Below are positions 5,501-63,950 of a stretch of DNA of 64,000 nt, one piece after another. Below the pieces are notes generated by a model. It was not told the DNA's origin. It was given only the letters and a program-made list of their open reading frames with translations, and searched no databases. The position numbers were made by a program, and so were the translations under genes. How positions within the stretch are numbered: the first letter of the stretch is position 1; every line of letters begins with the position of its first letter. The stretch is taken from positions 124,001 to 188,000 of the IMG/VR virus record IMGVR_UViG_3300032287_003113; one strand, written 5' to 3'.

Positions 5501-5739
5501 GGGAAACATTTTATTTCAGTGAATTGGCTGCATACTTGCATTCAACATTGACCCCTAACATATCAAGTGTGTTGATTGTGCCAGCAAGTAATAATTTGGT
5601 GTTTGGTAACTACTTCCAAATCAACGCCGAACCATGGGAAATTATTACCAGTGCCGCCACAGTCAATGATGTTGAAATAATTTCAGCTATCACAGCTGCT
5701 CAATTGAATTTGGGCAATACATTAGTCGGAACATATTAA
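2563..5739 (+). CDS. gp6: baseplate wedge subunit, gp6 family, with a large internal insertion
   Basis: 'DFTSYDFETLR...ARENFIDTAQRRDSILKLARMLSYNP', 'VVFGDG', 'YYTQNRMITAEDY', 'WDFGETFYFSEL' are gp6-like motifs; 1058 aa. Confidence 0.85.
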   Translation: MAQTTRQTNLLVQQDWTKIYQTFTNADFTSYDFETLRNSMITYLKTYYPETFNDFLESSEYLALIDMIAFLGQSLAFRADLNARENFIDTAQRRDSILKLARMLSYNPQRNTGASGLLKFESVRTTEFLTDSSGINLSNATIHWNDLTNENWLEQFTTILNAALVSSQAVGKPGNSQNLNNIKTDEYTINLNTNTLPVAPFTTTIQGSSVAFEAVSATSLGQSYLYERDPTSSGAFNVLYRNDNNGNGSNNTGFFLYFKQGKLNSTEFNITNAIPNNFVTVATNNINNTDAWLYSLDVNRNVSEKWTKVPALNGINVIYNQLTEKNLYQINTRTNDQVDVVFGDGSFSNIPQGSFRFYYRTGNGITYSITPDDMASVSVAFSYISKQNRVETLTITASLNYTVTNANAAPSLSSIKASAPQQYYTQNRMITAEDYNIFPQTNYGSIQKIKAVNRTSSGVSLYLDALDPTGSFSSTNIFGDDGTISANNKIGSSQFDFLTDNDIYSAVYNVIIPTINSTEVRNYYYGNTSVFPRFSGNTNTVSGGNIKFNQNTVSTGTSTGFLANLVSNVTLQVGANVSHYLRYVDTGAVLQFSAPTGYRFNSEHQLQLGNTLTNAGDTLNFYAVVTDIVADSDPTVPNRITLGTVVPSGAILSNVSLAGAEAIVPAYKNDLSTSLITTIITQIKALLNFGLKYNTAVRVQYEDGSYGPYGVWENITPANIGSSTDWILKFTYNQGLYTINYRNLEYTFASAGNTKFYFDPSVRVYNSVIGTNVKDTIKILKINTKPNATAALDNDIVWQIYNTITATDGYVDKTKVLVQVPTTQAEAIPDNPDLYLQVAAGSADRDSLYFQYRHNVPGRSRINPTPVNIVDVYVLTSTYAIDYANYLKDLTGTIAEPELPTSTSLETAYSDLDNYKAVSDTLIYNPAKFKPLFGAKADVSLRARFQVVKNPAANVTDNEIKSQVITAVNKYFDVSNWDFGETFYFSELAAYLHSTLTPNISSVLIVPASNNLVFGNYFQINAEPWEIITSAATVNDVEIISAITAAQLNLGNTLVGTY

Positions 5740-20576: not shown

Positions 20577-20579
20577 ACT

Positions 20580-21926
20580 ATGGCACGAGGAATCTTTCAA
20601 AAAATCAATGGTATATGGAAGCGGGTAATTGCTCCGTCGTATAAAGATAATGGCACGTGGAAATCCGTGCAAAAAGGATTTGTTAAACGAGACGGAGTTT
20701 GGCAACAGTTCTACCCCAGCGATGTCATTGCTGATATATTGGTAGTAGGTGGAGGCGGCGGTGGTGGAGTTGGTTATGGATATGAAGGCGGTGGTGGTGG
20801 CGGAGCCGGCGGAGTTGTATTCCAGGAAGATCAAACTTTATCGGTACTAAACGGCAACAACTACACAATTAAAGTTGGCACAGGTGGCGGCGCCAATGAA
20901 TCAGGCACATACAGCCTATTTGGCACAGGTGGTATCACATTAACAAACACAGTAACTCCGGCTGTGTACGCAGGCACATACCCAGTGTACAATGGATTTT
21001 TAAACACATACGGAGTCTGGACTCATCCAGGCATGGCTGGTGCTGCCGTTGGCACAGTATCAGCTACATACACCACACAGATACAAACAGGTCAAGATTA
21101 CACTTTACGAGTCAGTGCCGACAATGCTATAGATGTTAGCATCGACGGCAACGCAGTTGGGTCAAATGGCGATTGGGGAACATATAACGATTATCGTGTA
21201 ACATTAGCATTTGGCGTTCATACTATAGTTTGTACAGCAACAAACTGGGGCGGCCCTGCCATGTTTGCTGCAGCACTATATGATCCACAGGGACGAGTGG
21301 TTTGGGATACTCGAGCACCTATAAATTACCCTGTTGTTGTTGTAGAAAGCGGAATCACTGCATTGGGTGGCGGTAATGGCGGTTGGGGGACTTCCAATCA
21401 GACAGCAGGCTCGGGAGCCAGCGGTGGCGGCGGGTGCGGATTTGTGTATACACACGAAGGTGGCGCAGGATATCCAGGACAAGGATATGAAGGCGGTACA
21501 GGAATATGGCAAGGATTTGGCCAAGCTGGGGGTGGCGGTGGCGGTGGATTTGCTGGCGCCGGACAAGGTAGTAACGGATTTGCTGGCGGAGCAGGCGGAC
21601 CCGGAATTACTATATTGGGATTTAGTGTAGGCGGTGGCGGTGGTGGTGGCTATGGAAATCGAAGCCCATATGGTAGTGGTCCAGGCGGTCCGGGAGGCTC
21701 CGGCGGCGGAGGCGATGGAAACGGTAATAATGCACAAGCCAATACTGGTGGCGGCGGTGGTGGTGGTCTGCACGGGGGTCAAACATCGGGTGGGCGTGGT
21801 GGCGATGGTATTGTAGTGGTACAATATGCCGGTGCACCAGCATTTACAGGTGGTACAATTACCTATGATAACGGAATAACCACACATGTTTTCACTTCTA
21901 GCGGTTCGCTAACAGCATTAGGATAA
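20580..21926 (+). CDS. glycine-rich distal fibre protein with an inserted beta-sandwich (lectin-like) domain
   Basis: N-terminal 'K.NG.WK' docking repeats; 'ILVVGGGGGGG', 'GGGGGAGGV', 'GGRGGDGIVVVQY', 'THVFTSSGSL'; insert containing 'SADNAIDVSIDG...ATNWGGPAMFAAAL'. Confidence 0.65.
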   Translation: MARGIFQKINGIWKRVIAPSYKDNGTWKSVQKGFVKRDGVWQQFYPSDVIADILVVGGGGGGGVGYGYEGGGGGGAGGVVFQEDQTLSVLNGNNYTIKVGTGGGANESGTYSLFGTGGITLTNTVTPAVYAGTYPVYNGFLNTYGVWTHPGMAGAAVGTVSATYTTQIQTGQDYTLRVSADNAIDVSIDGNAVGSNGDWGTYNDYRVTLAFGVHTIVCTATNWGGPAMFAAALYDPQGRVVWDTRAPINYPVVVVESGITALGGGNGGWGTSNQTAGSGASGGGGCGFVYTHEGGAGYPGQGYEGGTGIWQGFGQAGGGGGGGFAGAGQGSNGFAGGAGGPGITILGFSVGGGGGGGYGNRSPYGSGPGGPGGSGGGGDGNGNNAQANTGGGGGGGLHGGQTSGGRGGDGIVVVQYAGAPAFTGGTITYDNGITTHVFTSSGSLTALG

Positions 21927-21934
21927 TATTGGCG

Positions 21935-21941
21935 ATAAATA
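21935..21941 (+). promoter_or_regulatory. T4-like late promoter ATAAATA
   Basis: GATAAATA in the AT-rich gap before fibre gene 21968. Confidence 0.55.
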
Positions 21942-21967
21942 AGTTAATATAATTAAGAAATTACAAT

Positions 21968-23956
21968 ATGCCATATCAAATTAACAAAACAGACGGAACG
22001 GTATTAACAACAATTGCCGATGGAACTAGAGATACTACTACTAGTTTGAGTCTAGCTGGCCCAAATTTTGTTGGATATGGAGAATACTTGAATGAAAATC
22101 TAGTAGGTTTACTAGAAAATTTTGCCAGTAACACAGCCCCAAGTTCGGTCAATTTGCAGGGACAGTTATGGTACGATAAGAATGCACAGATTCTAAAAGT
22201 TTTCACACCACAAGGTTATGTGGCAGTTTCGGGTGTTACCAATTCTGGAAGTCAACCAGCCTTGGGCAAAAATGGCGATATTTGGTTTAACCAGTCCACT
22301 GAGCAGATGTATGTTTACGACAACAGTGGCAGCAATGCAGGTTTTAAAATTGTAGGTCCTGCATATACCAAACAACAAGGTGTCAGTGGTGCAGTTCCCG
22401 TTACTGTAGAAGATGGTTCAATCAGTGGCACATATCATAATATTTTAAAACTACAGTATGGCAACGTAACCTATGCCACTGTCAGTGCAGATTCTGCATT
22501 CTTACCAACACCGGCTATTCCAGGTTTTAGTTTTGTCAATCCTGGAATCACATTCAGTAGCAATGTAAATAATCCCACTGTCAATGCCAATGTTATAACC
22601 GGTGGCGCCAGTGGTTTGGTCATGGTAGATATCGTCAATCGTCAATTGCAAGGAACCTTACACGGCAACGTGGTAGCCACAACATTGAGTGGTACATTAA
22701 CTGGCAATGTCATTGGTAATTTAACTGGTAATGTAGTGGCCACAACGCTACGCGGTAACTTAACTGGTAATCTTTCTGCAACAGTTACACACTCTACAAA
22801 CTTTAGCAGCGGTAATGCTGTAATCACTGGCGGCTATGTACAAAATTTAGCTAACGTATCGGCCGCAGTTGGCACAATAACAACATTATCTAGTACTACC
22901 GGTCAAGCAACCAACTTCAGTTCAAGTAATGTTTTGGTTACTGGTGGTGCAGTTACAGGACTACTTAACTTTTCAACCTTGGTTGGTCAAAGCACAAACT
23001 TCAGTAGTGGTAACATACGTGTTAGTGGTGGTAGTGCAACCGGACTGCTTAATTTTTCAACCTCGTATGGCCAAAGCACAAACTTTAGCAGCGGTAATAT
23101 TTTGGTCACTGGTGGTAGTGCAACAGATTTAACTAATTTTTCAACCACTACAGGACAAAGTACAAACTTTAGTTCAAGCAATATTTTGGTCACCGGTGGT
23201 AGTGCAACAGGACTGACTGCATACAGTGGCACAATCGGACAAGCAACCAATTTTAGTAGTAGCAACGTGTTAGTCACGGGTGGTAATGTGTCAGGAGTAA
23301 CTGGTGTCAATAACACCTTTACATCGGCCAATTTGGTTAATTCGGTAGCAACAACAAAAACAGCCGGTGACTCAACCACAGCCGTAGCCACAACAGCATT
23401 TGTACACGCAGTTTTACCCACTGGTATAATTGTGATGTGGAACAGCACAGCAGCCAGCATACCTGCAGGATGGCAGTTATGTAACGGTAGTAATGGAACT
23501 CCAGACCTGCGTGGACAATTTGTTGTGGGCGCCGGTGGCTCGTACACACCAGGGGATTCAGGCGGAGCAGCATCAGTGACGTTAAGTGCCAACGCTATGC
23601 CAATACACACGCATGAACTAACCGGATCACTAACTACTGGTTCAGCAGGATCACACTCGCATACAGCATCTGTGACTGATCCCGGACATAATCATTCGTT
23701 GCCAATTCAATACAGTGGTTCGGGTGGTAATTTCCCAGATTTAAACGGATTTTCAGGAACTCCTGTTTCTAGCCCATCACCTACAGGAACCGCTGTTACA
23801 AATATCAGCGTAAGTGTAGCTTCAGTTATAGATCACACACATTCATTGACATTGAGCGGAAATACTCAAACCGCCGGTGGTTCAGGTGGAACCACACAGC
23901 CGCATGAAAATCGTCCTCCGTACTACGCCCTATGTTACATCCAGAAAATGTACTAA
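21968..23956 (+). CDS. tail fibre protein 2 with 28-aa repeats, tail-collar domain and HxH tip motifs
   Basis: Shared N-terminal anchor; collar 'LPTGIIVMWN...IPAGWQLCNGSNGTPDLRGQFVVGAG'; HTH/HSH/HNH/HTH motifs; ends in 'HENRPPYYALCYIQK'. Confidence 0.8.
   Translation: MPYQINKTDGTVLTTIADGTRDTTTSLSLAGPNFVGYGEYLNENLVGLLENFASNTAPSSVNLQGQLWYDKNAQILKVFTPQGYVAVSGVTNSGSQPALGKNGDIWFNQSTEQMYVYDNSGSNAGFKIVGPAYTKQQGVSGAVPVTVEDGSISGTYHNILKLQYGNVTYATVSADSAFLPTPAIPGFSFVNPGITFSSNVNNPTVNANVITGGASGLVMVDIVNRQLQGTLHGNVVATTLSGTLTGNVIGNLTGNVVATTLRGNLTGNLSATVTHSTNFSSGNAVITGGYVQNLANVSAAVGTITTLSSTTGQATNFSSSNVLVTGGAVTGLLNFSTLVGQSTNFSSGNIRVSGGSATGLLNFSTSYGQSTNFSSGNILVTGGSATDLTNFSTTTGQSTNFSSSNILVTGGSATGLTAYSGTIGQATNFSSSNVLVTGGNVSGVTGVNNTFTSANLVNSVATTKTAGDSTTAVATTAFVHAVLPTGIIVMWNSTAASIPAGWQLCNGSNGTPDLRGQFVVGAGGSYTPGDSGGAASVTLSANAMPIHTHELTGSLTTGSAGSHSHTASVTDPGHNHSLPIQYSGSGGNFPDLNGFSGTPVSSPSPTGTAVTNISVSVASVIDHTHSLTLSGNTQTAGGSGGTTQPHENRPPYYALCYIQKMY
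22901..23305 (+). repeat. 84-bp (28-aa) tandem repeat, about 5 copies
   Basis: Units begin at 22901, 22985, 23069, 23153 and 23237; consensus GQ(S/A)TNFSS(G/S)N(I/V)LVTGGSATGLxNFST. Confidence 0.9.
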
Positions 23957-23959
23957 ATA
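23953..23959 (+). promoter_or_regulatory. T4-like late promoter CTAAATA
   Basis: Overlaps the stop of fibre 2, 25 nt before the fibre 3 ATG. Confidence 0.45.
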
Positions 23960-23983
23960 CTAAGATAATCAAAGCGAAAAAAC

Positions 23984-25978
23984 ATGGCATACACAATTAA
24001 TTTAACCAATGGTACAGAAATAGTCGCAGGCGGTCTTTCCGACGGCTCTGTAGATACCAGTGCCACCAGTTTAACTCTAATTGGTAAAAACTACGCTGGC
24101 TACGGCGAAATTCTAAACGAAAATCTAGTGCACCTACTGGAAAATTTTGCCAGTCCAAATTCGGGTGCCACTTCAGGCCCACCCAATCCTTTAGCCGGAC
24201 AGCTTTGGTGGGACACAACCAATAACATTTTACGTGTGTATTCGGGCACAAGCTGGAAAATTTCAACTGGTGCTACCAGTGCTCCATTTTCAAGCCCTCC
24301 GGGAGATTTAAGTGCTCTAGGCGGGGACTTATGGTTTGATAGTACCAATCAACAGTTAAAAATATACTCTGGAGCCAATTGGGTAACAGTAGGTCCTGCT
24401 GCAACACCGGTCACAGGTGACACAGGTGCTTTCCCGAGTGTAATGACAGATACACTGGGCGGTAGCCATATTGTTACACAGATTAGAATTGCTGGTGTTC
24501 CTTATATGATCGTCAGCAAAGACACTTTTCCCAGTGCCCTAGCAGGATTCAGCACAGTTAGAGCTGGTATTAATTTTAGTACTATTGCCAGTCCAGTTAT
24601 GGGCATCAACACACAAGATATCAATGCCACGGCCAGCACCTTGGTCCAACGCGACTCATCTGCAGGCATCACTGGTGCTGGAATTACAGGTACAATATTG
24701 ACTGGTACCAACTACATTACTTCGCCAACTGTTATTGCGACAACCTCATTCAATGGAAATATTGCCGGCAATGTTACCGCAGACCTAGTAGAAGCAAGCA
24801 CTATTCGTGCGTCTGGTATCAGTGCTACGGGAGGATACACAGGCACACTATTGACCGCCAGCCAACCAAACGTGACCGGACTTGGCACTCTTACTGCACT
24901 CAATGTTAATGGCAACGTGGCCATAACTGCTGCAAGTGCCATACTCAACGGCAGTCCAATTGCTAGAATTGGCGATCCTGCCAACTTTAGTTCTATCAAC
25001 AGCACACCAATTGGCAATGCTGTGCCCAGTACCGGAGCATTTACCACACTAACAGCATCGGCCCTGACCACAACAGCGGCATTGACATCCAATGGTACTA
25101 TTATTGCCAGTACTGTACAGGCTGGAACCATTGGTAATTCAGGCGCAGTACTGTTTGGCACATTGAACTCATCAAGTGCAAGCCAGCCTAACCTTACCAC
25201 AGCATCAGCTTTGGTCAGCGTGGGCAACGTTACTACTGGTACTTGGAGTGCTACCACAGTACAACCACAATATGGTGGCACAGGTGTCAATAATGGCACA
25301 CGAACAATTACCCTGGGCGGTAGCTTAACAACCACAGCCGCTTGGACGCTTAACCAAAACGTTGAAATCAATTCTAGTCCAACCTTGCGTGGAACAAACT
25401 TTAACAGCATTCCAAATGGTGCTTTGATCAACAGCGGTATTGTTATTAACGGAATCAGTGTAGCCCTAGGCGGTACCTATAGTCAAACTTTAGTATCGAG
25501 TGTTACAGGAACAGCCAATCAAGTTATTACCAGTGCGGCATCAGGAAACATTACTCTAAGCACACCACAAGATATTGGAACAGCGAGTAACGTACGATTT
25601 GGTAGTTTGGGCATTGGTACAGCAGCGTCAGGAACCACCGGTGAAATACGTGCCACAAACAATATTGTTGCTTACTACTCAGACGATAGACTAAAAACAC
25701 GACTGGGTCGAATTGAAAACGCCCTGGACAAGATATGTAGTTTGGAAGGTTTCTACTATGAAGCCAATCAAACTGCACAAGATTTGGGTTACGCTGTTCA
25801 ACGTGAAATGGGTATCAGTGCCCAAAGCACACAATTGGTAGCACCCGAAATTGTTAAACCGGCTCCGATCGACGACCGGTACTTGACTGTGCAATACGAG
25901 CGTTTTGCTCCGTTGATCATCGAAGCTATCAAAGAGTTACGTGTTGAAATTGATGCTTTGAAAGCAAAAATTAAATAA
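23984..25978 (+). CDS. tail fibre protein 3 with C-terminal intramolecular chaperone (peptidase S74-like) domain
   Basis: Shared N-terminal anchor; C-terminal 'YSDDRLKT....IENALDKICSLEGFYY...GISAQ...APEIV...LIIEAIKEL'. Confidence 0.85.
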   Translation: MAYTINLTNGTEIVAGGLSDGSVDTSATSLTLIGKNYAGYGEILNENLVHLLENFASPNSGATSGPPNPLAGQLWWDTTNNILRVYSGTSWKISTGATSAPFSSPPGDLSALGGDLWFDSTNQQLKIYSGANWVTVGPAATPVTGDTGAFPSVMTDTLGGSHIVTQIRIAGVPYMIVSKDTFPSALAGFSTVRAGINFSTIASPVMGINTQDINATASTLVQRDSSAGITGAGITGTILTGTNYITSPTVIATTSFNGNIAGNVTADLVEASTIRASGISATGGYTGTLLTASQPNVTGLGTLTALNVNGNVAITAASAILNGSPIARIGDPANFSSINSTPIGNAVPSTGAFTTLTASALTTTAALTSNGTIIASTVQAGTIGNSGAVLFGTLNSSSASQPNLTTASALVSVGNVTTGTWSATTVQPQYGGTGVNNGTRTITLGGSLTTTAAWTLNQNVEINSSPTLRGTNFNSIPNGALINSGIVINGISVALGGTYSQTLVSSVTGTANQVITSAASGNITLSTPQDIGTASNVRFGSLGIGTAASGTTGEIRATNNIVAYYSDDRLKTRLGRIENALDKICSLEGFYYEANQTAQDLGYAVQREMGISAQSTQLVAPEIVKPAPIDDRYLTVQYERFAPLIIEAIKELRVEIDALKAKIK

Positions 25979-56296: not shown

Positions 56297-56478
56297 TATT
56301 CTACTCCAAAATGTTTTAAAATATTGTCACTGCTCTGATAAGGTTCGGCGGTGTGTGCAATATCAGCACACTCCCGCACAATGGCCTGGGCAAACTCTTC
56401 AACCTTGAGTCGCCATATGGGGCTATGAGCAATGGTAAAGTGAGTGTCCTCGGCTATGCGTTGGATATTTTCGTTCAT
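56296..56478 (-). CDS. small phage hypothetical protein (start at 56478, MNENIQRIAED)
   Basis: 'VEEFAQAIVRECA...ILKHFGVE'; ATGA overlap with the VWA gene stop. Confidence 0.55.
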   Translation of the reverse strand: MNENIQRIAEDTHFTIAHSPIWRLKVEEFAQAIVRECADIAHTAEPYQSSDNILKHFGVE

Positions 56479-57719
56479 TTCACAGCATCTTCGTAGTGGG
56501 CATACACACCAAACTCGGGTTTGGCTTCTTTGTTGCCTTTGATAATCCACACAGTATCGCAATACTGCTCGACCTGATCAGGGCTCCAACCAAAGAAACA
56601 AAAGTCAGTAAACATGATCAATTTCTTGGGTTCGATGTTGTTTTCTTCCAACCAGGTCCAAACACAATGCGGATCTGTACCACCGCCACCACCCGGTACA
56701 AAGCTCTCAATGTCAGCGATATTGTCCGATGTGAATATTTCGTGATTGTGTACTTCGGTATCCCAACCCAACACATGGATACGATATTCGTCGTAACTTT
56801 CCATGATACCTTTGATTTCACTCAAGAAAATCTTGAGATCTGGGTCAGTGATACTACCTGAAGTATCAATACCAATCACAACATCAATCTGGTTGCCGGG
56901 CAACATGCCGGGCATGACAGCATCCATATGCCACCCTCTGCGGCTGGGACGTTGCCAAGTAAAATCACTCTTGATAGAACTTTCAACCTGCTGATTGATC
57001 AACTCACGCCAGTTAATCACAGGTTCGGTTAGGTCCTTGATCATGCGTTTGACACCACCGGGCAAATTACCTGCACCCGAAGCATTGGCGGCATTTAGTA
57101 CTGCATCTTTGATTTCGTCGCGAATAGCCTTCTTTTCTTCTTCGCTCAGGCGTGGACGACCGTTGCCTGGCTTGTCGCCATCTTCGCCTTCACCACCTTC
57201 TCCGTCCAAATGTTCGTCTAGTAGACGCTTCATCAATTCATCAATGTTGATTTTGTCGGCATTGGCATACAAGTCATCATACACTTCTTCGGCACTCATA
57301 CCTTTGTACTTCGAGTCGTACAGGGCAACGGGAATCTTGTCGCCAATACGTTGTTCTACCAGGTCCCAGTTTACGCAATAGTCATCGGCAATGTTCCACA
57401 GTTTTGGATCTCTGTTGCCACGACGTCCCATATGGTCATAAACCGCATGAAGCACTTCATGTCCGACCAAGAATTCCAATTGCTTTAGGGGAAGGTTATT
57501 GACAAACTCTGAATTATAGTAAAATTTACGGCCGTCTGTGGCGGCAGTAGGACACCATTCATCTGCGTTGATAAGTGTTAGGCGGGTAGCAAGGTTGCCA
57601 AAGAATGGAGCACGGAGCAAAAGACCAATACGTGCGGTAACCAGTTTTTCGCGGGCACTTGCATCCGTCTTGGGATCTGTTACTGTTACCGCTTTACTTT
57701 TTTCTGCTAGTGTAGTCAT
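56475..57719 (-). CDS. VWA-domain protein with metallopeptidase-like HExxH domain (DUF2201-like); MoxR partner
   Basis: 'TAATDGRKFYYN', 'HEVLH', 'WNIADDY.VN', 'RPSRR', MIDAS 'IDTSGS', 'GGGGTD', 'MFTD'; AGGAG RBS before ATG 57719. Confidence 0.85.
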   Translation of the reverse strand: MTTLAEKSKAVTVTDPKTDASAREKLVTARIGLLLRAPFFGNLATRLTLINADEWCPTAATDGRKFYYNSEFVNNLPLKQLEFLVGHEVLHAVYDHMGRRGNRDPKLWNIADDYCVNWDLVEQRIGDKIPVALYDSKYKGMSAEEVYDDLYANADKINIDELMKRLLDEHLDGEGGEGEDGDKPGNGRPRLSEEEKKAIRDEIKDAVLNAANASGAGNLPGGVKRMIKDLTEPVINWRELINQQVESSIKSDFTWQRPSRRGWHMDAVMPGMLPGNQIDVVIGIDTSGSITDPDLKIFLSEIKGIMESYDEYRIHVLGWDTEVHNHEIFTSDNIADIESFVPGGGGGTDPHCVWTWLEENNIEPKKLIMFTDFCFFGWSPDQVEQYCDTVWIIKGNKEAKPEFGVYAHYEDAVK

Positions 57720-57743
57720 TCTGTTCGCTCCTGTATTATATAT

Positions 57744-57772
57744 ATTATACATTTAATTGATTTTTTGGTCAA
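57744..57772 (-). promoter_or_regulatory. sigma70-type early promoter, conserved-spacer family
   Basis: TTGACC-AAAAAATCAATTAAATG-TATAAT. Confidence 0.75.
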
Positions 57773-58064
57773 CCTTTTGGTTAGCACGGTTTTTTCGTTG
57801 ATTAAACACATCTTCCATGCCCTGTACACTAGAACCAGGCTTGATCACTTGTGGTGCTGTGGGCTGGCTGACTGCGACTGTGGCACGTGGTTCAGGTGCT
57901 GTGGGACGGCAAATATCATTGCCGCTGATGCTTCGGCTGATCTTGCAGTCTTGATCGCGAACAGCACTGATACCATGGTCTGCTAGACCTTTACCGGTGG
58001 TTTCTACCGAAGCCACACTAGCTAGACCGACTATGAGCAAAGGACCTATGACCATTGTGGCCAC
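57753..58064 (-). CDS. hypothetical protein (hydrophobic N-terminus, two Cys)
   Basis: 103 aa; 'TTGKGLADHGIS...DC...IC'. Confidence 0.5.
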   Translation of the reverse strand: MATMVIGPLLIVGLASVASVETTGKGLADHGISAVRDQDCKISRSISGNDICRPTAPEPRATVAVSQPTAPQVIKPGSSVQGMEDVFNQRKNRANQKVDQKIN

Positions 58065-58243
58065 CTTAACATAAAATAAGTACGGTCTGCTGGGTCGGGG
58101 ATATATAACATCATTTGTCCTAGTGCTATCTTATTGTGGCCTAACCAAGTACCAATGGATTCTTTGTTATCTAACCACCATTTACGATTCATGACTACAC
58201 AAATCTCTGGAGTATCTAGTTCTGGACAAAAGTCATAGTTCAT
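58046..58243 (-). CDS. small hypothetical protein
   Basis: 65-aa ORF ending 'RTYFMLRW', overlapping the next gene. Confidence 0.5.
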   Translation of the reverse strand: MNYDFCPELDTPEICVVMNRKWWLDNKESIGTWLGHNKIALGQMMLYIPDPADRTYFMLRWPQWS

Positions 58244-58281
58244 AAGAATAAGGAGGACTTACAGCGTGTGCCTGCCCCCTG
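58244..58281 (-). terminator. possible intrinsic terminator after the MoxR ATPase
   Basis: Minus strand AGGGGGC...GTCCTCCT imperfect stem followed by TATTCTT. Confidence 0.3.
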
Positions 58282-58298
58282 CCTGTGACAGCAACCTT

Positions 58299-59408
58299 TT
58301 ACTTACCGCCTGCCGCGATAATGTACTTGCCGTACCGCTTATGGAACTCATCAAAGTTCTTGAGCTTGCCTGGTACCAAGGGTAAGTTGTACGTGGTCAA
58401 CGCAACTCTAGCACCCATAACAACCAATTCAGTGGTAAAGTTATCCATCATAAAGCGGAAGAAGTTATCGGCCATACCGTGCCATTGGCTGATCTTTTCC
58501 TTGCCTAGTTTGGCATAAGCATCTTGCAATTCATAGCACATGGACACAGTCAAGGAGTACATGGCACTGACTTCTTTGACATCTAAAGTCTTGACCTTGC
58601 CTGCCAAGATTTCGCTTGGGTTAGGCATCTTGCTGGCAACCTTGCGGTGTGCCATAAACTTAACTGCCAAGCCATCACCGATAGTACCAGCAATCAAGTC
58701 CGACAATTCTGCATCTGTGGCATCTTCGTCATGTAAGAATTCACTTACAAAGTGCCATGAACGTGGTGTTGCAAAGGCACGGCTGGCTGAGCGTGGGTTA
58801 AAATCCATCAAGTCTTGCTTGGCAAAACCAATGTAACCTACCACGTCCTTGTGCTCACGATTCTGCACAGCCCACTCGTTCCATGAGTCGTAATCAGCAC
58901 GTACTTCCAAATGTACGAAACGATTTGCCAGGGGCATTGGCATACGGAAACTAACACCTTTGTCGCTTTCACGATTACCCGCGGCCACAATTACCACATT
59001 CTTGGGCAGGTGATACTTGCCTAGTCTGCGATTGAGAATCAACTGATAGGCCGCGGCCTGTACTGCCGGGGCTGCCACGTTCATTTCGTCCAAGAACAAG
59101 GTCACAACAGGATATTCTGCGGCCAACTCTGGTGTTGGTAAATCCACAGGTTCAGCCCAGTCCATTTTGCCCGACTCTTTGTTATAAAACGGAATACCAC
59201 GCAGATCTGTGGGCTCCATCTGGCCTAGACGTAAGTCAATGGTATAACCGCCTAATTCTTGGGTAAGACCGGCTACCAATTCACTTTTACCTACTCCGGG
59301 AGGACCCCAAATAAAAACAGGGCGTTGGACTTTGAATGCACGAAGCAAGCGGCTACGGCATTCATTGGGTGTTACTGTACGGCTTTCACTAATAGTTGTA
59401 CTCATCAC
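58299..59408 (-). CDS. MoxR-family AAA+ ATPase
   Basis: Walker A 'GPPGVGKS', 'LRLGQMEPTDLRGIP', Walker B 'LFLDEMN', 'AAGNR', 'PLANRFVH', 'TPRSW'. Confidence 0.9.
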   Translation of the reverse strand: MMSTTISESRTVTPNECRSRLLRAFKVQRPVFIWGPPGVGKSELVAGLTQELGGYTIDLRLGQMEPTDLRGIPFYNKESGKMDWAEPVDLPTPELAAEYPVVTLFLDEMNVAAPAVQAAAYQLILNRRLGKYHLPKNVVIVAAGNRESDKGVSFRMPMPLANRFVHLEVRADYDSWNEWAVQNREHKDVVGYIGFAKQDLMDFNPRSASRAFATPRSWHFVSEFLHDEDATDAELSDLIAGTIGDGLAVKFMAHRKVASKMPNPSEILAGKVKTLDVKEVSAMYSLTVSMCYELQDAYAKLGKEKISQWHGMADNFFRFMMDNFTTELVVMGARVALTTYNLPLVPGKLKNFDEFHKRYGKYIIAAGGK

Positions 59409-60409: not shown

Positions 60410-60438
60410 ATTATACATTTAATGGATTTATGGGTCAA
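60410..60438 (-). promoter_or_regulatory. sigma70-type early promoter, conserved-spacer family
   Basis: TTGACC-CATAAATCCATTAAATG-TATAAT. Confidence 0.8.
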
Positions 60439-60440
60439 CC

Positions 60441-60469
60441 AAAAAAACACCCCTAAAAAGGGGTATTTT
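60441..60469 (-). terminator. intrinsic terminator closing the RM/ABC-GNAT operon
   Basis: Minus strand TACCCCT-TTTT-AGGGGTG followed by TTTTTTT, about 20 nt after the ABC-GNAT stop. Confidence 0.7.
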
Positions 60470-60490
60470 AAGCGTTGTAAGTCATTGATT

Positions 60491-61549
60491 TTATTGAGAT
60501 TTTTTACCCATATATTCGTGGCTATAACACACCCTATAAGCATCGCGAACAGTGGTTGTGCCGCCATAGCCCGCCATTTTTCTAGCAGTACCGTCTTTGT
60601 TTAAGTAACTACCTATCCTAGACTTCTTGTTCATTGATGTGGGGCGCCACAGGTCTGACTTTTCTCTGTGTTCACCAAAGCTAGGGTGTGCAGTCTTACT
60701 AAAGTACCTTAGCCCACGGCTCACATATATTTCAGCAACGGCATCGCTAAACGCTGTGCCTATACCCATGCCCTGAAACTCGGGAAGGATTACTGTACGA
60801 TGACCACGCCAGTACGAATGAATATCTCTGTTGGTTGAATGTATTGCGGCATGGAAGCCAATGGGCTTGTCGCCTAACAGTAACACATAGTAATGAGCAC
60901 TCTTACTGATTGCAGTATCTAGATAGTGATACCGACTGAAATATCTCCAATAGTCGACACTTGAGCTTTTGATGGTGAGTGCAAGTTGTGGTCTTGTCCC
61001 CAGTCGAAAGGGTGACCTCCGGTTTTCTAAGACACAGAGATCTGTGTCATATACGTAGTCTGGATCTAACCATTCTACTATGTCTCGATGGCAACTGGCA
61101 ATGTATAACGGATTGGTACTGCTTTGACGATCGTAAAACTTGCGAATACTCAATGCAAGACTCTTAGCAGTATCACGGTCCACAACACTTGTAAACTCAT
61201 CTACTGCGGTTAATCCTTGGTCTAGACTTATGGCCATTTCAAAGCGATGATATTCGCCGTTGCTCAATGTTGCAGGTGCTCGGAACCAAGCGGGTATGCT
61301 ACGCAGGCCACAGGCCAGTAACAACTCTTCTCCACGTTCAGGTGTGGTAAAGTTCTCTATTGTGTTAAGAGTATTATCTACTACAGGTTGTTGAAGTTTG
61401 CCTAAGCTACGTAGGATAGTACTCTTGCCACTGCCTGACGTACCTACAATTAATACAATACCATCCGTTGGAAGCTCGGGTATTGCTACCTGTGACTCTT
61501 TATAGTCTGTGATGTCGTACTTGCGTTTAATTTCTTCTAAGTAGCTCAT
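60491..61549 (-). CDS. ABC-type ATPase fused to a C-terminal GNAT acyltransferase
   Basis: Walker A 'GTSGSGKST', signature 'LSNGE', Walker B 'VDEFTSVVDR'; GNAT motif A 'RTVILPEFQGMGIG'. Confidence 0.85.
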   Translation of the reverse strand: MSYLEEIKRKYDITDYKESQVAIPELPTDGIVLIVGTSGSGKSTILRSLGKLQQPVVDNTLNTIENFTTPERGEELLLACGLRSIPAWFRAPATLSNGEYHRFEMAISLDQGLTAVDEFTSVVDRDTAKSLALSIRKFYDRQSSTNPLYIASCHRDIVEWLDPDYVYDTDLCVLENRRSPFRLGTRPQLALTIKSSSVDYWRYFSRYHYLDTAISKSAHYYVLLLGDKPIGFHAAIHSTNRDIHSYWRGHRTVILPEFQGMGIGTAFSDAVAEIYVSRGLRYFSKTAHPSFGEHREKSDLWRPTSMNKKSRIGSYLNKDGTARKMAGYGGTTTVRDAYRVCYSHEYMGKKSQ

Positions 61550-62754
61550 GCTATTTCAAATACAGCAGGATTTAAATCGTTGATAGTTTTTTTATTTTTC
61601 TTAGGTACAGGCAACACCGGTTTAGTAAAAGTTTTTCCAAGAGAATCAGCACAAACAACATTTGATGCAGGAACACCGGGTAATCTTTTTAAAGCAGAAT
61701 CTACATTAGATTGAGTTAAATCAATTCCGTATATGGTGTCCACAGGAATATTATTTGCTAATTTTCTTTTTTGTATTGCTACCAAAAACTGACCGTCACC
61801 ACACATAGAATCTATAAAAGTATTATCTGGATTTGTAAATGCAGTAGGATCGTATTGTTCAATGACGTTTAATACTTCTTCTACTAAACTTGTTGGAGTA
61901 AACACTTCGCCTAATGCTTTAACACGGTCTCGATCTTCCGTAATATCATTATCTAATACTTTAGGAGCCGTCAAATCTTGCGGTGTAATATTCCATTCTT
62001 TAGGAGTTTCTAATCCCGTAACAATTTGATTAATATCAAATTTTTTAACATTACGCATACCAAATGCATGGCCGCGTAGTTTCATACGTTTAACATATTC
62101 CTTAAAAACAGGATTCTTTTCTACAAATAATTTTAATTTTTCTGCTTCGGCAATAGTAGCAGTTGGTATGTAGCAGATAGTCCCACCATATACTGCTTCA
62201 TCTGTGACCGTATAACTTTTACGACTTTCCATTGTATAAAAGGCAAATTTAGGACCTGCGTCAATTTTGACGTCGGTATAATCATATGCAACTTGATCTC
62301 TACCTTTACCGGGCAACTGTCTAATTACTTTATTCTTTTTACCTGCACCAAAAAACTTATTCATGCCATTGTTACTGCCACTGTAATAAACAAAGTCAAA
62401 ACAATCTGCAGGGTTGGGACTGTAAATCTTTGCAGCCATGCCACCTAATATTACAGGCGGGGTCGTGCGTGGAAGTTTGCTTACACTAAAGAAACAGGTG
62501 TTATACGGCCATACATCAAGATTGTCCATTAAATGAATAAAGTTAACTTGATAGTCTTTAAAGTACCCGTTGACCAAGTCTGGGATAATGCCTTTGAGGG
62601 TAATATTAACTAATGTACCAGAGTCGGCAACACGATTATCAAAATCGTTGCGTGTGGCTGTTTTATAAAGAGTGGTGTTTCCGCCAGTGCCGGCAATGTT
62701 ATTACCTTCGGCTACATTGAACGCTGGGTTACTAATTGCATAATTAAATTGCAT
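61546..62754 (-). CDS. amino-DNA methyltransferase (m6A/m4C type) with permuted motif order
   Basis: N-terminal 'FNYAISNPAF' (motif IV-like); C-terminal 'LGEVFTP' (X), 'IDSMCGDGQFL' (I), 'YGIDL' (II), 'VCADSL' (III). Confidence 0.75.
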   Translation of the reverse strand: MQFNYAISNPAFNVAEGNNIAGTGGNTTLYKTATRNDFDNRVADSGTLVNITLKGIIPDLVNGYFKDYQVNFIHLMDNLDVWPYNTCFFSVSKLPRTTPPVILGGMAAKIYSPNPADCFDFVYYSGSNNGMNKFFGAGKKNKVIRQLPGKGRDQVAYDYTDVKIDAGPKFAFYTMESRKSYTVTDEAVYGGTICYIPTATIAEAEKLKLFVEKNPVFKEYVKRMKLRGHAFGMRNVKKFDINQIVTGLETPKEWNITPQDLTAPKVLDNDITEDRDRVKALGEVFTPTSLVEEVLNVIEQYDPTAFTNPDNTFIDSMCGDGQFLVAIQKRKLANNIPVDTIYGIDLTQSNVDSALKRLPGVPASNVVCADSLGKTFTKPVLPVPKKNKKTINDLNPAVFEIA

Positions 62755-63466
62755 TTGACATTTTCTTAAAGATTTCTTTTAATTCTTCTGTGGACTTTAA
62801 ATATTTAGTCTGCCAAGATTTATATAATTCAGGTTCTGTTTTAGAATTAAAATTCCACCCAATTTGGTCTTGTCTTTTTTTATCTAAGTTTTCTTGAAGA
62901 ATTGCTAATCTAGTAGCAGTATCACCTTTAATTTTTCCGGACCCTTGACTTGATCCGATGGCCTCGTAAAATTTAGGTTTGCCAGATTTTTTATCAATTT
63001 TGTAAGGGGTAATAGCACGTTGACGAATTTCATCGATTAGTTCGTCTTTGGTGAGATAAAAATATTCTACTTTAGTATTATCCCATGCCTTCATAAACAA
63101 GTAACCAGCCAAATCTTCGTAAAAGCGTAATTGCCCACCACCAATTGCATCACCGGATGAAAACGATACCTTAAGTTCAATATTATTTTTTCCTGGTACC
63201 AACATTTCTCCTGCAACTAAGTCGCCTAAGTCAAGACCTTCTTCGTCATTCTTTTTATCATAACTTAACGCATCTTTTTTCTTAGTACCAGTTTGGTGTG
63301 CTACCCAGCCCTCAATAAATTTTTCAGCTGATTTTTGTTTCATAGCACCATAATACTCGTACATTTCTGAATATGGTGTAATGTAATAATTTTCAATATT
63401 TTCTAATAGTTCTTGTATTTCTTTGCGTTCTTTATTGCTGGCTTTAATTCGATCAAGTAACGACAT
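62744..63466 (-). CDS. putative type II restriction endonuclease (PD-(D/E)xK fold)
   Basis: 'E..LGD...IELK....GGQLR' pattern; directly upstream of and overlapping the MTase; very AT-rich. Confidence 0.5.
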   Translation of the reverse strand: MSLLDRIKASNKERKEIQELLENIENYYITPYSEMYEYYGAMKQKSAEKFIEGWVAHQTGTKKKDALSYDKKNDEEGLDLGDLVAGEMLVPGKNNIELKVSFSSGDAIGGGQLRFYEDLAGYLFMKAWDNTKVEYFYLTKDELIDEIRQRAITPYKIDKKSGKPKFYEAIGSSQGSGKIKGDTATRLAILQENLDKKRQDQIGWNFNSKTEPELYKSWQTKYLKSTEELKEIFKKMSNAI

Positions 63467-63496
63467 AGATTTCCCAATATTTTACTGTAGAACTAC

Positions 63497-63525
63497 AGTA
63501 TAACACAAATGGATTTATTAGTCAA
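63497..63525 (-). promoter_or_regulatory. sigma70-type promoter of the RM operon, with an overlapping palindrome
   Basis: TTGACT-AATAAATCCATTTGTGT-TATACT; TACTGTAG-AA-CTACAGTA (63483-63500) overlaps the -10 element and start site. Confidence 0.7.
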
Positions 63526-63554
63526 CCTTTACAGTTGACTAAAAGTTATCCACA

Positions 63555-63950
63555 TTAAGTTATTACTATTCGCATGGTTTTCCAACTATTGTAGTACTGT
63601 TCGGTATTGTGACAGAGTCTACTGGTCACAATGTAACGATGATATCGTTGCCTAAACCTGCGATGAGATGTGGTAAGTTTATTGGGGTCAATTGACAACC
63701 AATAAAATGCGAGCCAGGCCCGCATGATAGAAACCACAGCAATTGGCGGAAAATCTCTGTCCATAATGGCATTTAAATATTGATCAACTCTTTTATTGAG
63801 TTCATCGTTATTGTTCACACGGCTGAGTTCTTCGCCAACGGCAATAGCAATTTCTTCGGGGCGGCCATATTTGACCACATGCTCTCCTACCCGTCCTTGC
63901 AAATCTGCCCAGAATAGTTTTTGTTTTTTGGTAAGACGTTTGACTTTCAC
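63555..63950 (-). CDS. hypothetical protein
   Basis: 131 aa; GTG start with AAAGGA upstream. Confidence 0.6.
   Translation of the reverse strand: MKVKRLTKKQKLFWADLQGRVGEHVVKYGRPEEIAIAVGEELSRVNNNDELNKRVDQYLNAIMDRDFPPIAVVSIMRAWLAFYWLSIDPNKLTTSHRRFRQRYHRYIVTSRLCHNTEQYYNSWKTMRIVIT

What the first reader, a model, noticed from the sequence alone, without database searches (positions are those of the whole stretch)
60441..63525. Self-contained low-GC operon: putative restriction endonuclease + methyltransferase + ABC-ATPase-GNAT
Seen: three overlapping genes (11-nt and 4-nt overlaps) bounded by their own sigma70 promoter (63497-63525) and intrinsic terminator (60441-60469). Two sampled 60-nt lines of the nuclease gene are about 25-27% GC, versus about 47% in a thyA line. 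Known: GNAT-fold Mom enzymes modify adenine in phage Mu DNA; phage-borne RM systems can degrade host or competitor DNA. Inference: this is a horizontally acquired anti-host or anti-competitor module in which the ABC-GNAT may add a second DNA modification, or acylate/regulate the nuclease.
Basis: partly seen in the sequence, partly recalled or inferred. Interest (0 to 1): 0.62.

Follow-up and report, generated by a model that had tools for sequence, protein, structure and literature searches.

The report
Phage restriction-modification cassette beside ABC-GNAT gene
A freshwater jumbo phage carries a small mobile restriction-modification gene pair (a DNA-cutting enzyme of an unclassified family plus a rearranged DNA methyltransferase) that has landed just upstream of a resident, widespread phage gene of unknown function (ABC-ATPase fused to an acetyltransferase); the three genes share a transcription unit but probably not a function.

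Summary
The three minus-strand genes, their 11-nt and 4-nt overlaps, the promoter-like site and a strong terminator are all present. Only the first two genes are low in GC (32.9% and 36.1%, against 42.6% for the genome). The ABC-GNAT gene is 44.5%.

- **Gene 1 (240 aa)** matches no curated family. It folds confidently as a PD-(D/E)xK restriction-endonuclease-like protein with an invariant D82...E97-x-K99 motif, and it is predicted to form a homodimer.
- **Gene 2 (402 aa)** is an amino-methyltransferase with permuted motif order (NPAF at the N-terminus, SAM-binding motif I near the C-terminus). Its fold matches N6-adenine DNA methyltransferases.
- **The pair is strictly linked.** The two genes sit together in every context recovered, and they travel as a cassette among large aquatic phages, mostly without ABC-GNAT.
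- **Gene 3 (ABC-GNAT, phrog_11143)** is a backbone gene found in at least 569 viral contigs. It usually lies in replication modules. None of the 80 loci examined has the nuclease nearby.
- **A variable slot.** In close relatives the position upstream of ABC-GNAT holds other nuclease or methyltransferase cassettes.

Verdict: this is a new member of Type II restriction-modification systems, inserted at a variable hot spot. A functional link between ABC-GNAT and the pair is not supported. The idea that ABC-GNAT modifies DNA is an existing published prediction and remains untested.

The parts
63497..63525 (-). Sigma-70-like promoter (TTGACT, 17 nt, TG-n-TATACT) at the head of the unit. It is one copy of an extended phage promoter motif.
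   Evidence: Consensus scan. The extended motif occurs 4 times in the 220-kb record against 0.16 expected. No transcript data are available.
62744..63466 (-). R gene: 240-aa PD-(D/E)xK restriction-endonuclease-like protein (P0001). Proposed catalytic residues are E48/E52, D82, E97 and K99. Predicted homodimer through N-terminal helices 3-44.
   Evidence: No Pfam, PHROG, NCBIfam or PADLOC family matches. 44 homologue clusters were found, with an invariant D82...E97xK99 and GGxQxRF. The AF2 model has pLDDT 90.9. Structural matches are almost all restriction endonucleases or PD-(D/E)xK nucleases, e.g. NhoI Z 7.1 and PvuII Z 6.0. Homodimer score 0.74 against a best control of 0.00. GC 32.9%.
61546..62754 (-). 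M gene: 402-aa DNA amino-methyltransferase (P0002) with permuted motif order. Motif IV (S8-N-P-A-F12) is at the N-terminus and the target-recognition region spans about 96-270. Motif X (EVFTP, 283-287), motif I (DSMCGDGQF, 315-323), motif II (D345) and motif III (D370) follow.
   Evidence: Pfam N6_Mtase match on residues 278-349 only, E 5.5e-4, 19.8 bits, just under the 20.4-bit cut-off. PADLOC MTase_II E 2e-5. Motif residues are invariant or nearly so across 20 homologues. AF2 pLDDT 79.5. Foldseek matches N6-adenine DNA methyltransferases: CamA E 4e-6, BrxX, M.BceJIV, M.TaqI and M1.HpyAVI. GC 36.1%.
60491..61549 (-). ABC-GNAT gene: 352-aa fusion (P0003) of an ABC-type ATPase and a GNAT acyltransferase. 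The ATPase part has Walker A (G36-S43), signature LSNGE (95-99), Walker B (D117-E118) and H-loop (H154). The GNAT part has the acyl-CoA motif QGMGIG (259-264). It is a resident backbone gene, not part of the low-GC island.
   Evidence: phrog_11143 E 2.6e-77; Pfam Acetyltransf_1 E 8e-6 and ABC_tran E 4e-5. Motifs are invariant across 8 distant homologues. The profile hits ABC ATPases in the PDB, E 4e-17. At least 569 viral-contig loci carry it. GC 44.5%. Synteny.
60437..60469 (-). Intrinsic terminator: an 11-bp stem, a 4-nt loop and a U7 tract, 22 nt past the ABC-GNAT stop codon.
   Evidence: Scan. Folding energy -18.9 kcal/mol, z -5.9.
60410..60438 (-). Next promoter (TTGACC, 17 nt, TATAAT; 11 of 12 matches), a second copy of the extended motif. 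It marks the start of the following transcription unit.

Best explanation
Positions 61546-63530 hold a mobile, phage-borne Type II-like restriction-modification cassette.

- **The nuclease.** It is a homodimeric PD-(D/E)xK endonuclease of a family not yet in curated libraries. It is translated first.
- **The methyltransferase.** Its start codon overlaps the nuclease stop by 11 nt. It is a motif-permuted amino-methyltransferase, probably specific for N6-adenine.
- **How it likely works (inferred).** Phage DNA leaves each infection already methylated. The nuclease can therefore be made early from a host-type promoter. It would cut unmethylated DNA of the host or of co-infecting phages that lack the cassette, which would also help the cassette spread.
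- **Where it landed.** The cassette has inserted into a variable slot directly upstream of ABC-GNAT, a resident gene of this phage lineage. It now shares that gene's transcription unit and is coupled to it by a 4-nt ATGA overlap.
- **ABC-GNAT itself.** It acts independently of the pair. The best guess is an ATP-dependent acyl transfer to a nucleic-acid substrate during replication.

Shown here: gene structure, fold and motifs, strict nuclease-methyltransferase linkage, cassette mobility, and independence of ABC-GNAT. Inferred: enzyme activities, shared sequence specificity, biological role, and the ABC-GNAT substrate.
For: **Nuclease**
- Confident model (pLDDT 90.9).
- The best structural matches are nearly all restriction enzymes or PD-(D/E)xK nucleases.
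- The catalytic D...ExK motif is invariant in 27 homologues and survives in versions only about 30% identical.
- Symmetric homodimer score 0.74, best of 3 controls 0.00. The runs agree in at least 88% of contacts and the partner's pLDDT is at least 86. In calibration the mark was reached by 20 of 30 proteins solved as pairs of one chain and by 1 of 23 solved as single chains. These counts hold only roughly because my own alignment was used.

**Methyltransferase**
- Motifs IV, X, I, II and III are conserved.
- The fold matches N6-adenine DNA methyltransferases.

**Linkage**
- In all 10 viral contigs with the methyltransferase, the gene directly upstream belongs to the nuclease family, usually with the same 11-nt overlap.
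- The same holds in L006, L009 and L016-L018.

**Mobility**
- The pair sits in unrelated neighbourhoods of 160-350-kb phage contigs.
- These are the lowest-GC and sixth-lowest-GC genes of the record.
- Contigs from other freshwater samples cover ABC-GNAT and the downstream genes but not the pair.

**Independence of ABC-GNAT**.

**Transcription unit**.
Against: - No biochemical or transcript data exist.
- Structural Z-scores of 6-7 lie in the range where a shared fold is credible but function is not proven (note).
- The best structural match, NhoI, is a methylation-dependent enzyme.
- The methyltransferase stays about 88% identical where the nuclease has diverged to about 30% (L100). That is unusual for a cognate pair and may mean the nuclease gene gets swapped.
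- The methyltransferase model is poor at residues 13-26 and 367-402, which include the catalytic loop and motif III.
- An ABC-GNAT followed by a 231-aa gene and a 415-aa methyltransferase-like gene, again with an 11-nt overlap, recurs in distant Aeromonas T4-like phages. This could hint at a real functional link.
- In L011 a nuclease homologue sits near ABC-GNAT without this methyltransferase.
Confidence: 0.6

Rival explanations
1. The three genes form one integrated system. ABC-GNAT adds a second (acyl) DNA mark, or it acylates or regulates the nuclease.
For: - One promoter, one terminator and overlapping genes.
- A published prediction that ABC-GNAT acylates DNA bases (PMC7824862).
- An ABC-GNAT next to a 231-aa plus 415-aa pair in Aeromonas phage AsFcp_4 and PX29-type phages.
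- L099 and L100 repeat the R-M-ABC-GNAT order.
- L011 has a nuclease homologue near ABC-GNAT without this methyltransferase.
Against: - 12 of 15 contexts of the pair lack ABC-GNAT.
- None of 80 ABC-GNAT loci has the nuclease, and only 1 of 80 has a methyltransferase-like piece.
- L099 and L100 belong to the same lineage and the same slot, so they are not independent cases.
- GC composition separates the pair from ABC-GNAT.
- The 231-aa Aeromonas-phage protein shows no similarity to the nuclease family, even profile against sequence.
Confidence: 0.12
2. The 240-aa protein is not a classical restriction enzyme. It would instead be a structure-specific or homing-type PD-(D/E)xK nuclease that mainly promotes cassette mobility or recombination, and the methyltransferase would be effectively an orphan.
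For: - The structural match list also holds the homing endonuclease I-Ssp6803I (Z 6.4), Hjc resolvases (Z 5.4) and RecU (Z 5.0).
- The cassette is found at many genomic positions.
- L104 and L105 keep the methyltransferase beside only a 47-aa nuclease remnant.
Against: - Strict adjacency to a DNA methyltransferase in every context is the hallmark of restriction-modification.
- Most top structural matches are Type II restriction enzymes.
- Losing the nuclease while keeping the methyltransferase is the usual way such systems decay (my knowledge).
Confidence: 0.1
3. The nuclease is modification-dependent, like NhoI or DpnI. The methyltransferase would create its targets on host or competitor DNA, and phage DNA would be shielded by some other means.
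For: The best structural match is the methyl-directed NhoI (Z 7.1). Eco15I N-domain (Z 6.5) and DpnI (Z 4.7) are also listed.
Against: - Fold similarity at this level does not tell methyl-dependent from methyl-sensitive enzymes. PvuII, ThaI and MspI score almost as well.
- Phage DNA would be methylated too, and no shielding system is evident.
- No ParB, formyltransferase or N6_N4 methyltransferase family gene was found in the 220-kb record. That record is estimated to be only 51% complete.
Confidence: 0.04
4. On ABC-GNAT alone: it acetylates a protein (as the phage Rac acetyltransferase does to RNA polymerase) or an RNA (as TmcA does to tRNA), rather than DNA.
For: - GNATs mostly act on proteins and small molecules.
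- Jumbo-phage GNATs have been proposed as modifiers of host proteins (PMC7824862).
- The ABC domain's PDB matches include ribosome-associated ABCF proteins such as ExpZ and EttA.
Against: - Its neighbours are overwhelmingly DNA replication and recombination genes, with occasional ParB and Mom.
- It sits beside ParB-like genes next to the terminase in Gordonia and Leptospira phages.
- In phiE255 it lies just past the tail-fibre genes, beside a formyltransferase, a position that recalls mom in Mu (the Mu comparison is from my knowledge).
- None of this is decisive.
Confidence: 0.3

Closest known systems
Orthodox Type IIP restriction-modification systems, e.g. PvuII
   Same: - Separate, adjacent nuclease and methyltransferase genes.
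- A small PD-(D/E)xK nuclease (PvuII Z 6.0).
- A predicted dimer through N-terminal helices, as in PvuII (my knowledge).
- A methyltransferase whose motif IV comes before motif I, the beta-class order.
   Different: - No sequence match to any curated restriction-enzyme family.
- The methyltransferase does not match PF01555. Its SAM-binding half resembles gamma-type PF02384/Eco57I enzymes instead.
- The nuclease gene comes first, with an 11-nt overlap and no controller gene in this window.
- It is carried by a jumbo phage that shows virion genes but no sign of lysogeny in the part examined.
- No relatives were found in 185,579 prokaryote species genomes by pattern scan.
Virus-encoded restriction-modification systems (chlorovirus CviAII type; phage P1 EcoP1I)
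   Same: A virus carries its own nuclease and methyltransferase. Its own DNA is pre-methylated, so the nuclease can attack host or competitor DNA. This comparison rests on my knowledge, not on a test here.
   Different: No homology was shown. The host is a bacterium and the virus is a freshwater myovirus-like jumbo phage, judged from baseplate and tail-fibre genes and a 4190-aa virion protein.
ABC ATPase-GNAT fusion predicted by Iyer, Aravind and colleagues to acylate a DNA base (quoted in PMC7824862; phrog_11143)
   Same: P0003 is a full-length member: phrog_11143 E 2.6e-77, 33-39% identical to the Tenacibaculum pT24, Aeromonas PX29, Nonlabens and Leptospira phage proteins, with all ATPase and GNAT motifs intact.
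   Different: Nothing distinguishes the protein itself. Only its neighbour here, a restriction-modification cassette, is unusual, and that adjacency is confined to this lineage.
Mom of phage Mu (GNAT-fold adenine N6 modifier)
   Same: GNAT superfamily. In the Mu-like phage phiE255 the ABC-GNAT gene lies past the tail-fibre genes, a position that recalls mom in Mu (the Mu comparison is from my knowledge). Two ABC-GNAT loci have a Mom-family neighbour.
   Different: P0003 gives no Pfam Mom match and carries an ABC ATPase domain that Mom lacks.
TmcA (ATP-dependent tRNA cytidine N4-acetyltransferase)
   Same: The same logic: an NTPase domain fused to a GNAT that acetylates a nucleobase amino group (my knowledge).
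   Different: The NTPase is a helicase type in TmcA and an ABC type here. No TmcA-type family appears among the Pfam matches shown for P0003 (25 of 29 listed).

Membership tests
Type II restriction-modification system | Adjacent, separately encoded nuclease and DNA methyltransferase genes that co-occur across genomes | tested here: met
   11-nt overlap in the window. The nuclease-family gene lies directly upstream of the methyltransferase in 10 of 10 viral contigs and in 5 further metagenome contexts.
Type II restriction-modification system | Nuclease with a recognised catalytic fold and conserved active-site residues | tested here: met
   PD-(D/E)xK fold (pLDDT 90.9; NhoI Z 7.1, PvuII Z 6.0). 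Invariant D82, E97 and K99. This is prediction only.
Type II restriction-modification system | Methyltransferase with SAM-binding motif I and catalytic motif IV | tested here: met
   DSMCGDGQF (315-323) and SNPAF (8-12) are invariant or nearly so in 20 homologues. The fold matches N6-adenine DNA methyltransferases. The Pfam score is just under its cut-off (19.8 against 20.4 bits).
Type II restriction-modification system | Both enzymes recognise the same DNA sequence, and methylation blocks cleavage | not testable with these tools
   Needs cloning, cleavage assays and a methylome.
Type II restriction-modification system | Homodimeric nuclease (Type IIP) | tested here: met
   Symmetric dimer score 0.74 against a best control of 0.00, with the interface at residues 3-44. 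The model supports binding but does not show it.
Beta-class amino-methyltransferases (Pfam PF01555 N6_N4_Mtase) | Sequence match to the family profile | tested here: not met
   P0002 has no PF01555 match. Its only match is a weak PF02384 hit on the C-terminal SAM module. The linear motif order (IV, target-recognition region, X, I, II, III) is beta-like, so it works like a beta-class enzyme but cannot be filed in that family.
ABC ATPase-GNAT fusion family (phrog_11143) | Full-length match to the family, with intact ABC motifs (Walker A, signature, Walker B, H-loop) and the GNAT acyl-CoA motif | tested here: met
   phrog_11143 E 2.6e-77 over residues 3-351. The motifs are invariant in an 8-sequence alignment. 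ABC profile matches in the PDB reach E 4e-17.
ABC ATPase-GNAT fusion family (phrog_11143) | Acylates a DNA base (the predicted function) | not testable with these tools
   This is only a published prediction (PMC7824862). The neighbourhood tally shows a replication-module context. No experimental paper was found.
Mom family (Pfam PF25680) | Sequence match to the Mom profile | tested here: not met
   Not among the Pfam matches shown for P0003 (25 of 29 listed), where the GNAT hits are Acetyltransf_1, _7, _6 and _10.

The most novel reading that the evidence does not exclude
The slot upstream of ABC-GNAT collects different nuclease cassettes: the PD-(D/E)xK restriction-modification pair, a helicase-nuclease with a methyltransferase, and an HNH-like pair. 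In this reading, ABC-GNAT places a generic acyl mark on phage DNA that shields it from whichever nuclease sits there. ABC-GNAT would then be a universal modification partner for swappable phage weapons.
Probability: 0.08. Interest if true: 0.75.

Novelty: new member of a known kind. Interest (0 to 1): 0.36.

Why it matters
- **A candidate new restriction-enzyme family.** The nuclease appears in no curated library and no sequence relative is solved. It comes with a permuted methyltransferase, and both were seen here only in large aquatic phages.
- **Relevance to phage competition.** Restriction-modification pairs on such phages bear on how phages destroy host DNA or exclude rivals.
- **A variable slot.** The position next to ABC-GNAT is a small example of a swap-in weapons locus in jumbo phages.
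- **A correction.** ABC-GNAT, a widespread phage protein with at least 569 viral loci and no tested function, should not be annotated as part of a restriction-modification system because of this one adjacency. Its replication-module context is the better lead.

Tried and rejected
- **Near-identical DNA in GenBank phages:** none found.
- **tblastn of the nuclease against phages:** none found.
- **The 231-aa Aeromonas-phage protein as a nuclease relative:** rejected by BLASTP and by profile comparison.
- **The 407-aa gene upstream of the pair in L006 as an ABC-GNAT:** rejected.
- **The 198-aa gene in L011 as a formyltransferase:** rejected.
- **The recurrent 350-416-aa plus ~190-aa pair in relatives as a split GmrSD-like system:** I suspected this from the motifs DYEVQRD, YDAQHR and FEHxIP. 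Pfam, PADLOC and PDB profile searches gave nothing except HNH_4 at E 0.17. It is left as a guess.
- **Relatives of the nuclease and methyltransferase in prokaryote genomes:** pattern scans found none. This method is limited and does not prove absence.
- **Expression:** no RNA runs were found.
- **Formyltransferase, ParB_N and N6_N4_Mtase genes in the phage's own 220-kb record:** none found, but the record is only about half complete.
- **Papers:** Iyer et al. 2013 (NAR gkt573) and Krishnan et al. 2020 (NAR gkaa726) are not held. The published prediction is therefore cited second-hand from PMC7824862.
- **Programmed frameshift fusing the two genes:** considered and dropped, because there is no slippery heptamer at the junction (sequence).


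Full report
**1. What is there**

Three minus-strand ORFs occupy 62744-63466 (240 aa, P0001), 61546-62754 (402 aa, P0002) and 60491-61549 (352 aa, P0003). They overlap by 11 nt and 4 nt.

- A sigma-70-like site (TTGACT, 17 nt, TATACT, with a TG extension) lies at 63525-63497.
- A terminator-like hairpin lies at 60469-60444. It is strong: -18.9 kcal/mol, z -5.9, followed by U7.
- Promoter-like sites in this region are no more frequent than chance (14 against 13.2 expected).
- This site, however, belongs to a longer motif found four times in the 220-kb record, against 0.16 expected. A second copy sits immediately after the terminator at 60438.
- The unit boundaries are therefore credible. Co-transcription itself is untested, because no RNA run holds the sequence.

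**2. Composition**

The window lies in a 219,879-bp viral record, G000:C1:124001-188000. CheckV estimates it as 51% complete. Relatives lie on 340-355-kb contigs. The record encodes baseplate and tail-fibre proteins and a 4190-aa virion protein. It comes from freshwater metagenomes.

| Sequence | GC | GC3 |
|---|---|---|
| Genome | 42.6% | not computed |
| Genes of 100 aa or more (mean) | 42.4 +/- 3.1% | 38.5 +/- 5.3% |
| P0001 gene (nuclease) | 32.9%, lowest of 209 | 24.5% |
| P0002 gene (methyltransferase) | 36.1% | 25.6% |
| P0003 gene (ABC-GNAT) | 44.5% | 40.5% |

The "low-GC operon" is really a 2-kb low-GC island of two genes placed in front of a gene with normal composition.

**3. The 240-aa protein**

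- It matches no Pfam, PHROG, NCBIfam or PADLOC family, and tblastn finds nothing in GenBank phages.
- The word search found 44 homologue clusters, all metagenomic.
- Their alignment shows invariant E48, E52, D79, G81, D82, N94, N95, E97, K99, G110, Q112 and R114. This is a PD-(D/E)xK signature, D82...E97-x-K99.
- The AF2 model is confident: pLDDT 90.9, pTM 0.87.
- Foldseek's best rows are NhoI, HincII, DpnI and PvuII, but they are weak (E 0.05-1).
- The exhaustive VIA-align search lists almost only PD-(D/E)xK nucleases. Examples are NhoI Z 7.1, Eco15I N-domain 6.5, I-Ssp6803I 6.4, a restriction endonuclease in complex with substrate DNA (entry 3ndh) 6.3, PvuII 6.0, D212 5.8, Hjc 5.4 and MspI 5.3.
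- Z near 7 supports a shared fold, not a function. The invariant catalytic triad is the stronger argument.
- The triad survives in family members only about 30% identical: GD...(E/D)xK...GGxQxRF in L100, L102, L107 and L108.
- A symmetric homodimer through N-terminal helices (residues 3-44) is predicted. The score is 0.74, the best of 3 controls is 0.00, the runs agree in at least 88% of contacts, and the partner's pLDDT is at least 86. In calibration the mark was reached by 20 of 30 proteins solved as pairs of one chain and by 1 of 23 solved as single chains. These counts hold only roughly because my own alignment was used.

**4. The 402-aa protein**

- Pfam sees only a weak N6_Mtase match on residues 278-349 (E 5.5e-4, 19.8 bits against a 20.4-bit cut-off).
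- PHROGs and PADLOC give methyltransferase matches on the same stretch.
- The search reported 263 homologues. An alignment of 20 of them shows that motif IV (S8-N9-P10-A11-F12) is invariant and sits at the very N-terminus.
- Motif X (EVFTP), motif I (F313-x-D-x-M-x-G-x-G-x-F323), D345 and D370 lie near the C-terminus.
- The AF2 model (pLDDT 79.5) gives strands 3-8, 42-53, 68-74 and 86-95, then a large middle domain, then the SAM-binding strands from residue 313 on. Residues 13-26 and 367-402 are modelled poorly.
- Foldseek matches N6-adenine DNA methyltransferases: CamA E 4e-6, BrxX/PglX, M.BceJIV, M.TaqI and M1.HpyAVI. TM-scores are low, as expected for a permuted chain.
- The linear order (IV-VIII, target-recognition region, X, I-III) is the beta-class order.
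- The SAM-binding module, however, resembles gamma-type enzymes, and PF01555 does not match.
- I therefore call it a beta-ordered amino-methyltransferase. N6-adenine is the likely target, because motif IV begins with N and all fold matches are N6-adenine enzymes. This last step is an inference.

**5. Are the two a pair?**

Yes.

- In all 10 viral contigs that carry a P0002 homologue, the gene directly upstream matches the P0001-family profile, usually with the same 11-nt overlap. In L104 and L105 only a 47-aa remnant of it is left, beside an intact methyltransferase.
- The same pair occurs in five further metagenome contexts: L006, L009, L016, L017 and L018.
- The surrounding genes differ completely. 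They include Dam and N6_N4 methyltransferases in L006, DnaJ and ClpB in L009, porin and curli genes in L016, and QueC and radical-SAM genes in L018.
- This is a mobile two-gene cassette. In L016-L018 it carries an extra 57-aa ORF in front.
- Pattern scans of 185,579 prokaryote species genomes found no relative of either gene. As far as this method sees, the family is confined to phages.

**6. Is ABC-GNAT part of it?**

The evidence says no.

- P0003 is a clear member of phrog_11143 (E 2.6e-77).
- It has intact Walker A, LSNGE signature, Walker B DE, H-loop and GNAT QGMGIG motifs.
- The family has 91 GenBank phage records and at least 569 IMG/VR loci.
- Among the 80 best IMG/VR loci, none has the nuclease family within 6 kb and one (L021) has a methyltransferase-like piece.
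- A Pfam tally of 107 upstream and 87 downstream neighbours shows, upstream, primase (PriCT_1 6, AEP-TOTE 5), DnaB and other helicases.
- The same tally shows, downstream, DNA polymerase A (5) and B (2), UvrD-like helicases and RusA. ParB_N and Mom each appear only twice, and methyltransferases are not enriched.
- Twelve close relatives (ABC-GNAT 75-91% identical) show a conserved backbone on both sides and a variable slot just upstream of ABC-GNAT.
- In nine of them (L022-L026, L028-L030, plus L011) the slot holds a ~190-aa HNH-like gene. In most of these it is paired with a 350-416-aa gene.
- In L021 the slot holds a ResIII helicase, an Eco57I-like methyltransferase and a 190-aa SAM module.
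- In the window, L099 and L100 the slot holds the restriction-modification pair.
- The ~190-aa HNH-like family is also independent of ABC-GNAT. It has 210 viral loci. Of the 80 best, 60 have its partner nearby and only 16 have ABC-GNAT.
- Contigs from another freshwater study cover ABC-GNAT and the downstream genes but not the pair (run X4). Contigs show presence, not absence.
- Of the contexts of the pair, 3 have ABC-GNAT next to it (all the same lineage and slot), 12 do not, and 1 is cut off.

**7. Points that keep the link alive**

- In Aeromonas phage AsFcp_4 and PX29-type phages, ABC-GNAT is followed by a 231-aa gene and a 415-aa gene with an 11-nt overlap.
- The C-terminal SAM module of that 415-aa protein matches P0002 (36% identity, E 8e-11).
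- The 231-aa protein is unrelated to P0001.
- In L011 a P0001 homologue (43% identical) lies two genes upstream of an ABC-GNAT that is 80% identical to P0003, and P0002 is absent.
- I give the integrated reading 0.12.

**8. What ABC-GNAT may do**

[quoted passage not shown] The 2013 source paper is not held.
- I found no experimental follow-up.
- In Gordonia phage Axumite the order is ParB-like gene, ABC-GNAT, a Formyl_trans_N protein annotated as "tRNA-methyltransferase", then terminase.
- In Leptospira phage LE3 a ParB-like gene precedes ABC-GNAT near the terminase.
- In the Mu-like phage phiE255, ABC-GNAT (gp29) and a formyltransferase (gp30) follow the tail-fibre genes.
- ParB-like proteins are known partners of phage DNA-modifying enzymes, for example ParB-dependent thymine dioxygenases (bioRxiv 10.1101/2025.08.14.668559).
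- Together with the replication-module context, this favours a nucleic-acid substrate, probably DNA, but it does not prove one.
- The window's record has no ParB_N or formyltransferase gene in the 220 kb held.

**9. Mechanism proposed**

- Shown: the parts, their linkage and their mobility.
- Inferred: a host-type promoter drives early expression.
- Inferred: the nuclease gene comes first, which a phage can tolerate because its DNA arrives already methylated from the previous infection.
- Inferred: the methyltransferase is translationally coupled to the nuclease through the ATG in AAATGCAATTTAA (sequence).
- Inferred: the nuclease dimer cuts unmethylated host DNA or rival phage DNA. This feeds nucleotide pools, excludes competitors, and favours genomes that carry the cassette.

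**10. Verdict**

The nuclease and methyltransferase calls are supported. The functional tie to ABC-GNAT is not. This is a new member of a known kind. It is of moderate interest for enzyme discovery and for the variable slot, and of low interest as a new system.

Noticed in passing
window 60410-60438 and 63497-63525; also G000:C1 near 10841 and 78203 (minus strand): An extended promoter motif, GGTTGAC(C/T)NATAAATCC(A/T)TT...TATA(A/C)T, occurs four times in the 220-kb record against 0.16 expected. It is probably a class of phage early promoters read by the host polymerase.
   Followed up: partly
L011:6413-8129; L023:3207-5004; L024:4194-6004; L028:4032-5995; L029:3617-5415; L030:3890-5998: A recurrent two-gene cassette of unknown function fills the same slot upstream of ABC-GNAT in relatives. 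One gene is 350-416 aa, with motifs DYEVQRD and YDAQHR. The other is about 190 aa and HNH-like, with motif FEHxIP. The HNH-like family has 210 IMG/VR loci, and 60 of the 80 best have the partner nearby. A GmrSD-like split nuclease was suspected but not confirmed.
   Followed up: partly
L021:1862-5999: In one close relative the slot holds a ResIII-type helicase (766 aa), an Eco57I-like methyltransferase (435 aa) and a free-standing 190-aa protein. That small protein consists only of the motif X and motif I SAM module, 46% identical to P0002 residues 271-358. Similar small SAM-module proteins occur in T4-like cyanophages and Aeromonas phages.
   Followed up: partly
L001:4851-8001 (Aeromonas phage AsFcp_4, MH791407.1): ABC-GNAT is followed by a 231-aa gene and a 415-aa methyltransferase-like gene with the same 11-nt overlap. 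All three are annotated as hypothetical. The 231-aa protein is unrelated in sequence to the window's nuclease.
   Followed up: partly
L002:1805-2452 (Gordonia phage Axumite gene 3); L003:5062-5676 (phiE255 gp30): The Gordonia phage gene annotated as "tRNA-methyltransferase" matches Pfam Formyl_trans_N (E 1e-8), like phiE255 gp30. ABC-GNAT next to a formyltransferase-like gene thus recurs in two unrelated phage groups.
   Followed up: partly
L104:1720-1863 and L105:3868-4011: Only a 47-aa C-terminal remnant of the nuclease gene remains in front of an intact methyltransferase. This looks like decay of the restriction half of the cassette.
   Followed up: no
L016, L017, L018: 4167-4340: A conserved 57-aa ORF overlaps the start of the nuclease gene by 4 nt in three unrelated contexts. 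It may be a controller protein. It is absent from the window.
   Followed up: no
window 5739-18311 (+) and 2563-5739 (+): A 4190-aa ORF matches a virion structural protein family (phrog_10938). It follows a 1058-aa baseplate wedge protein, and tail-fibre genes lie at 18999-25978.
   Followed up: partly
window 56475-59408 (-): A MoxR-like AAA ATPase (369 aa) and a DUF2201 metallopeptidase/VWA protein (425 aa) lie downstream of the unit. Both are conserved in the syntenic relatives.
   Followed up: no
window 63555-63950 (-) and the next gene upstream (L005:1948-2262): Two small genes (131 aa and 104 aa) lie between the conserved backbone and the nuclease gene. They have no family match and no counterpart in the close relatives, so the variable slot in this phage is wider than the restriction-modification pair.
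   Followed up: partly
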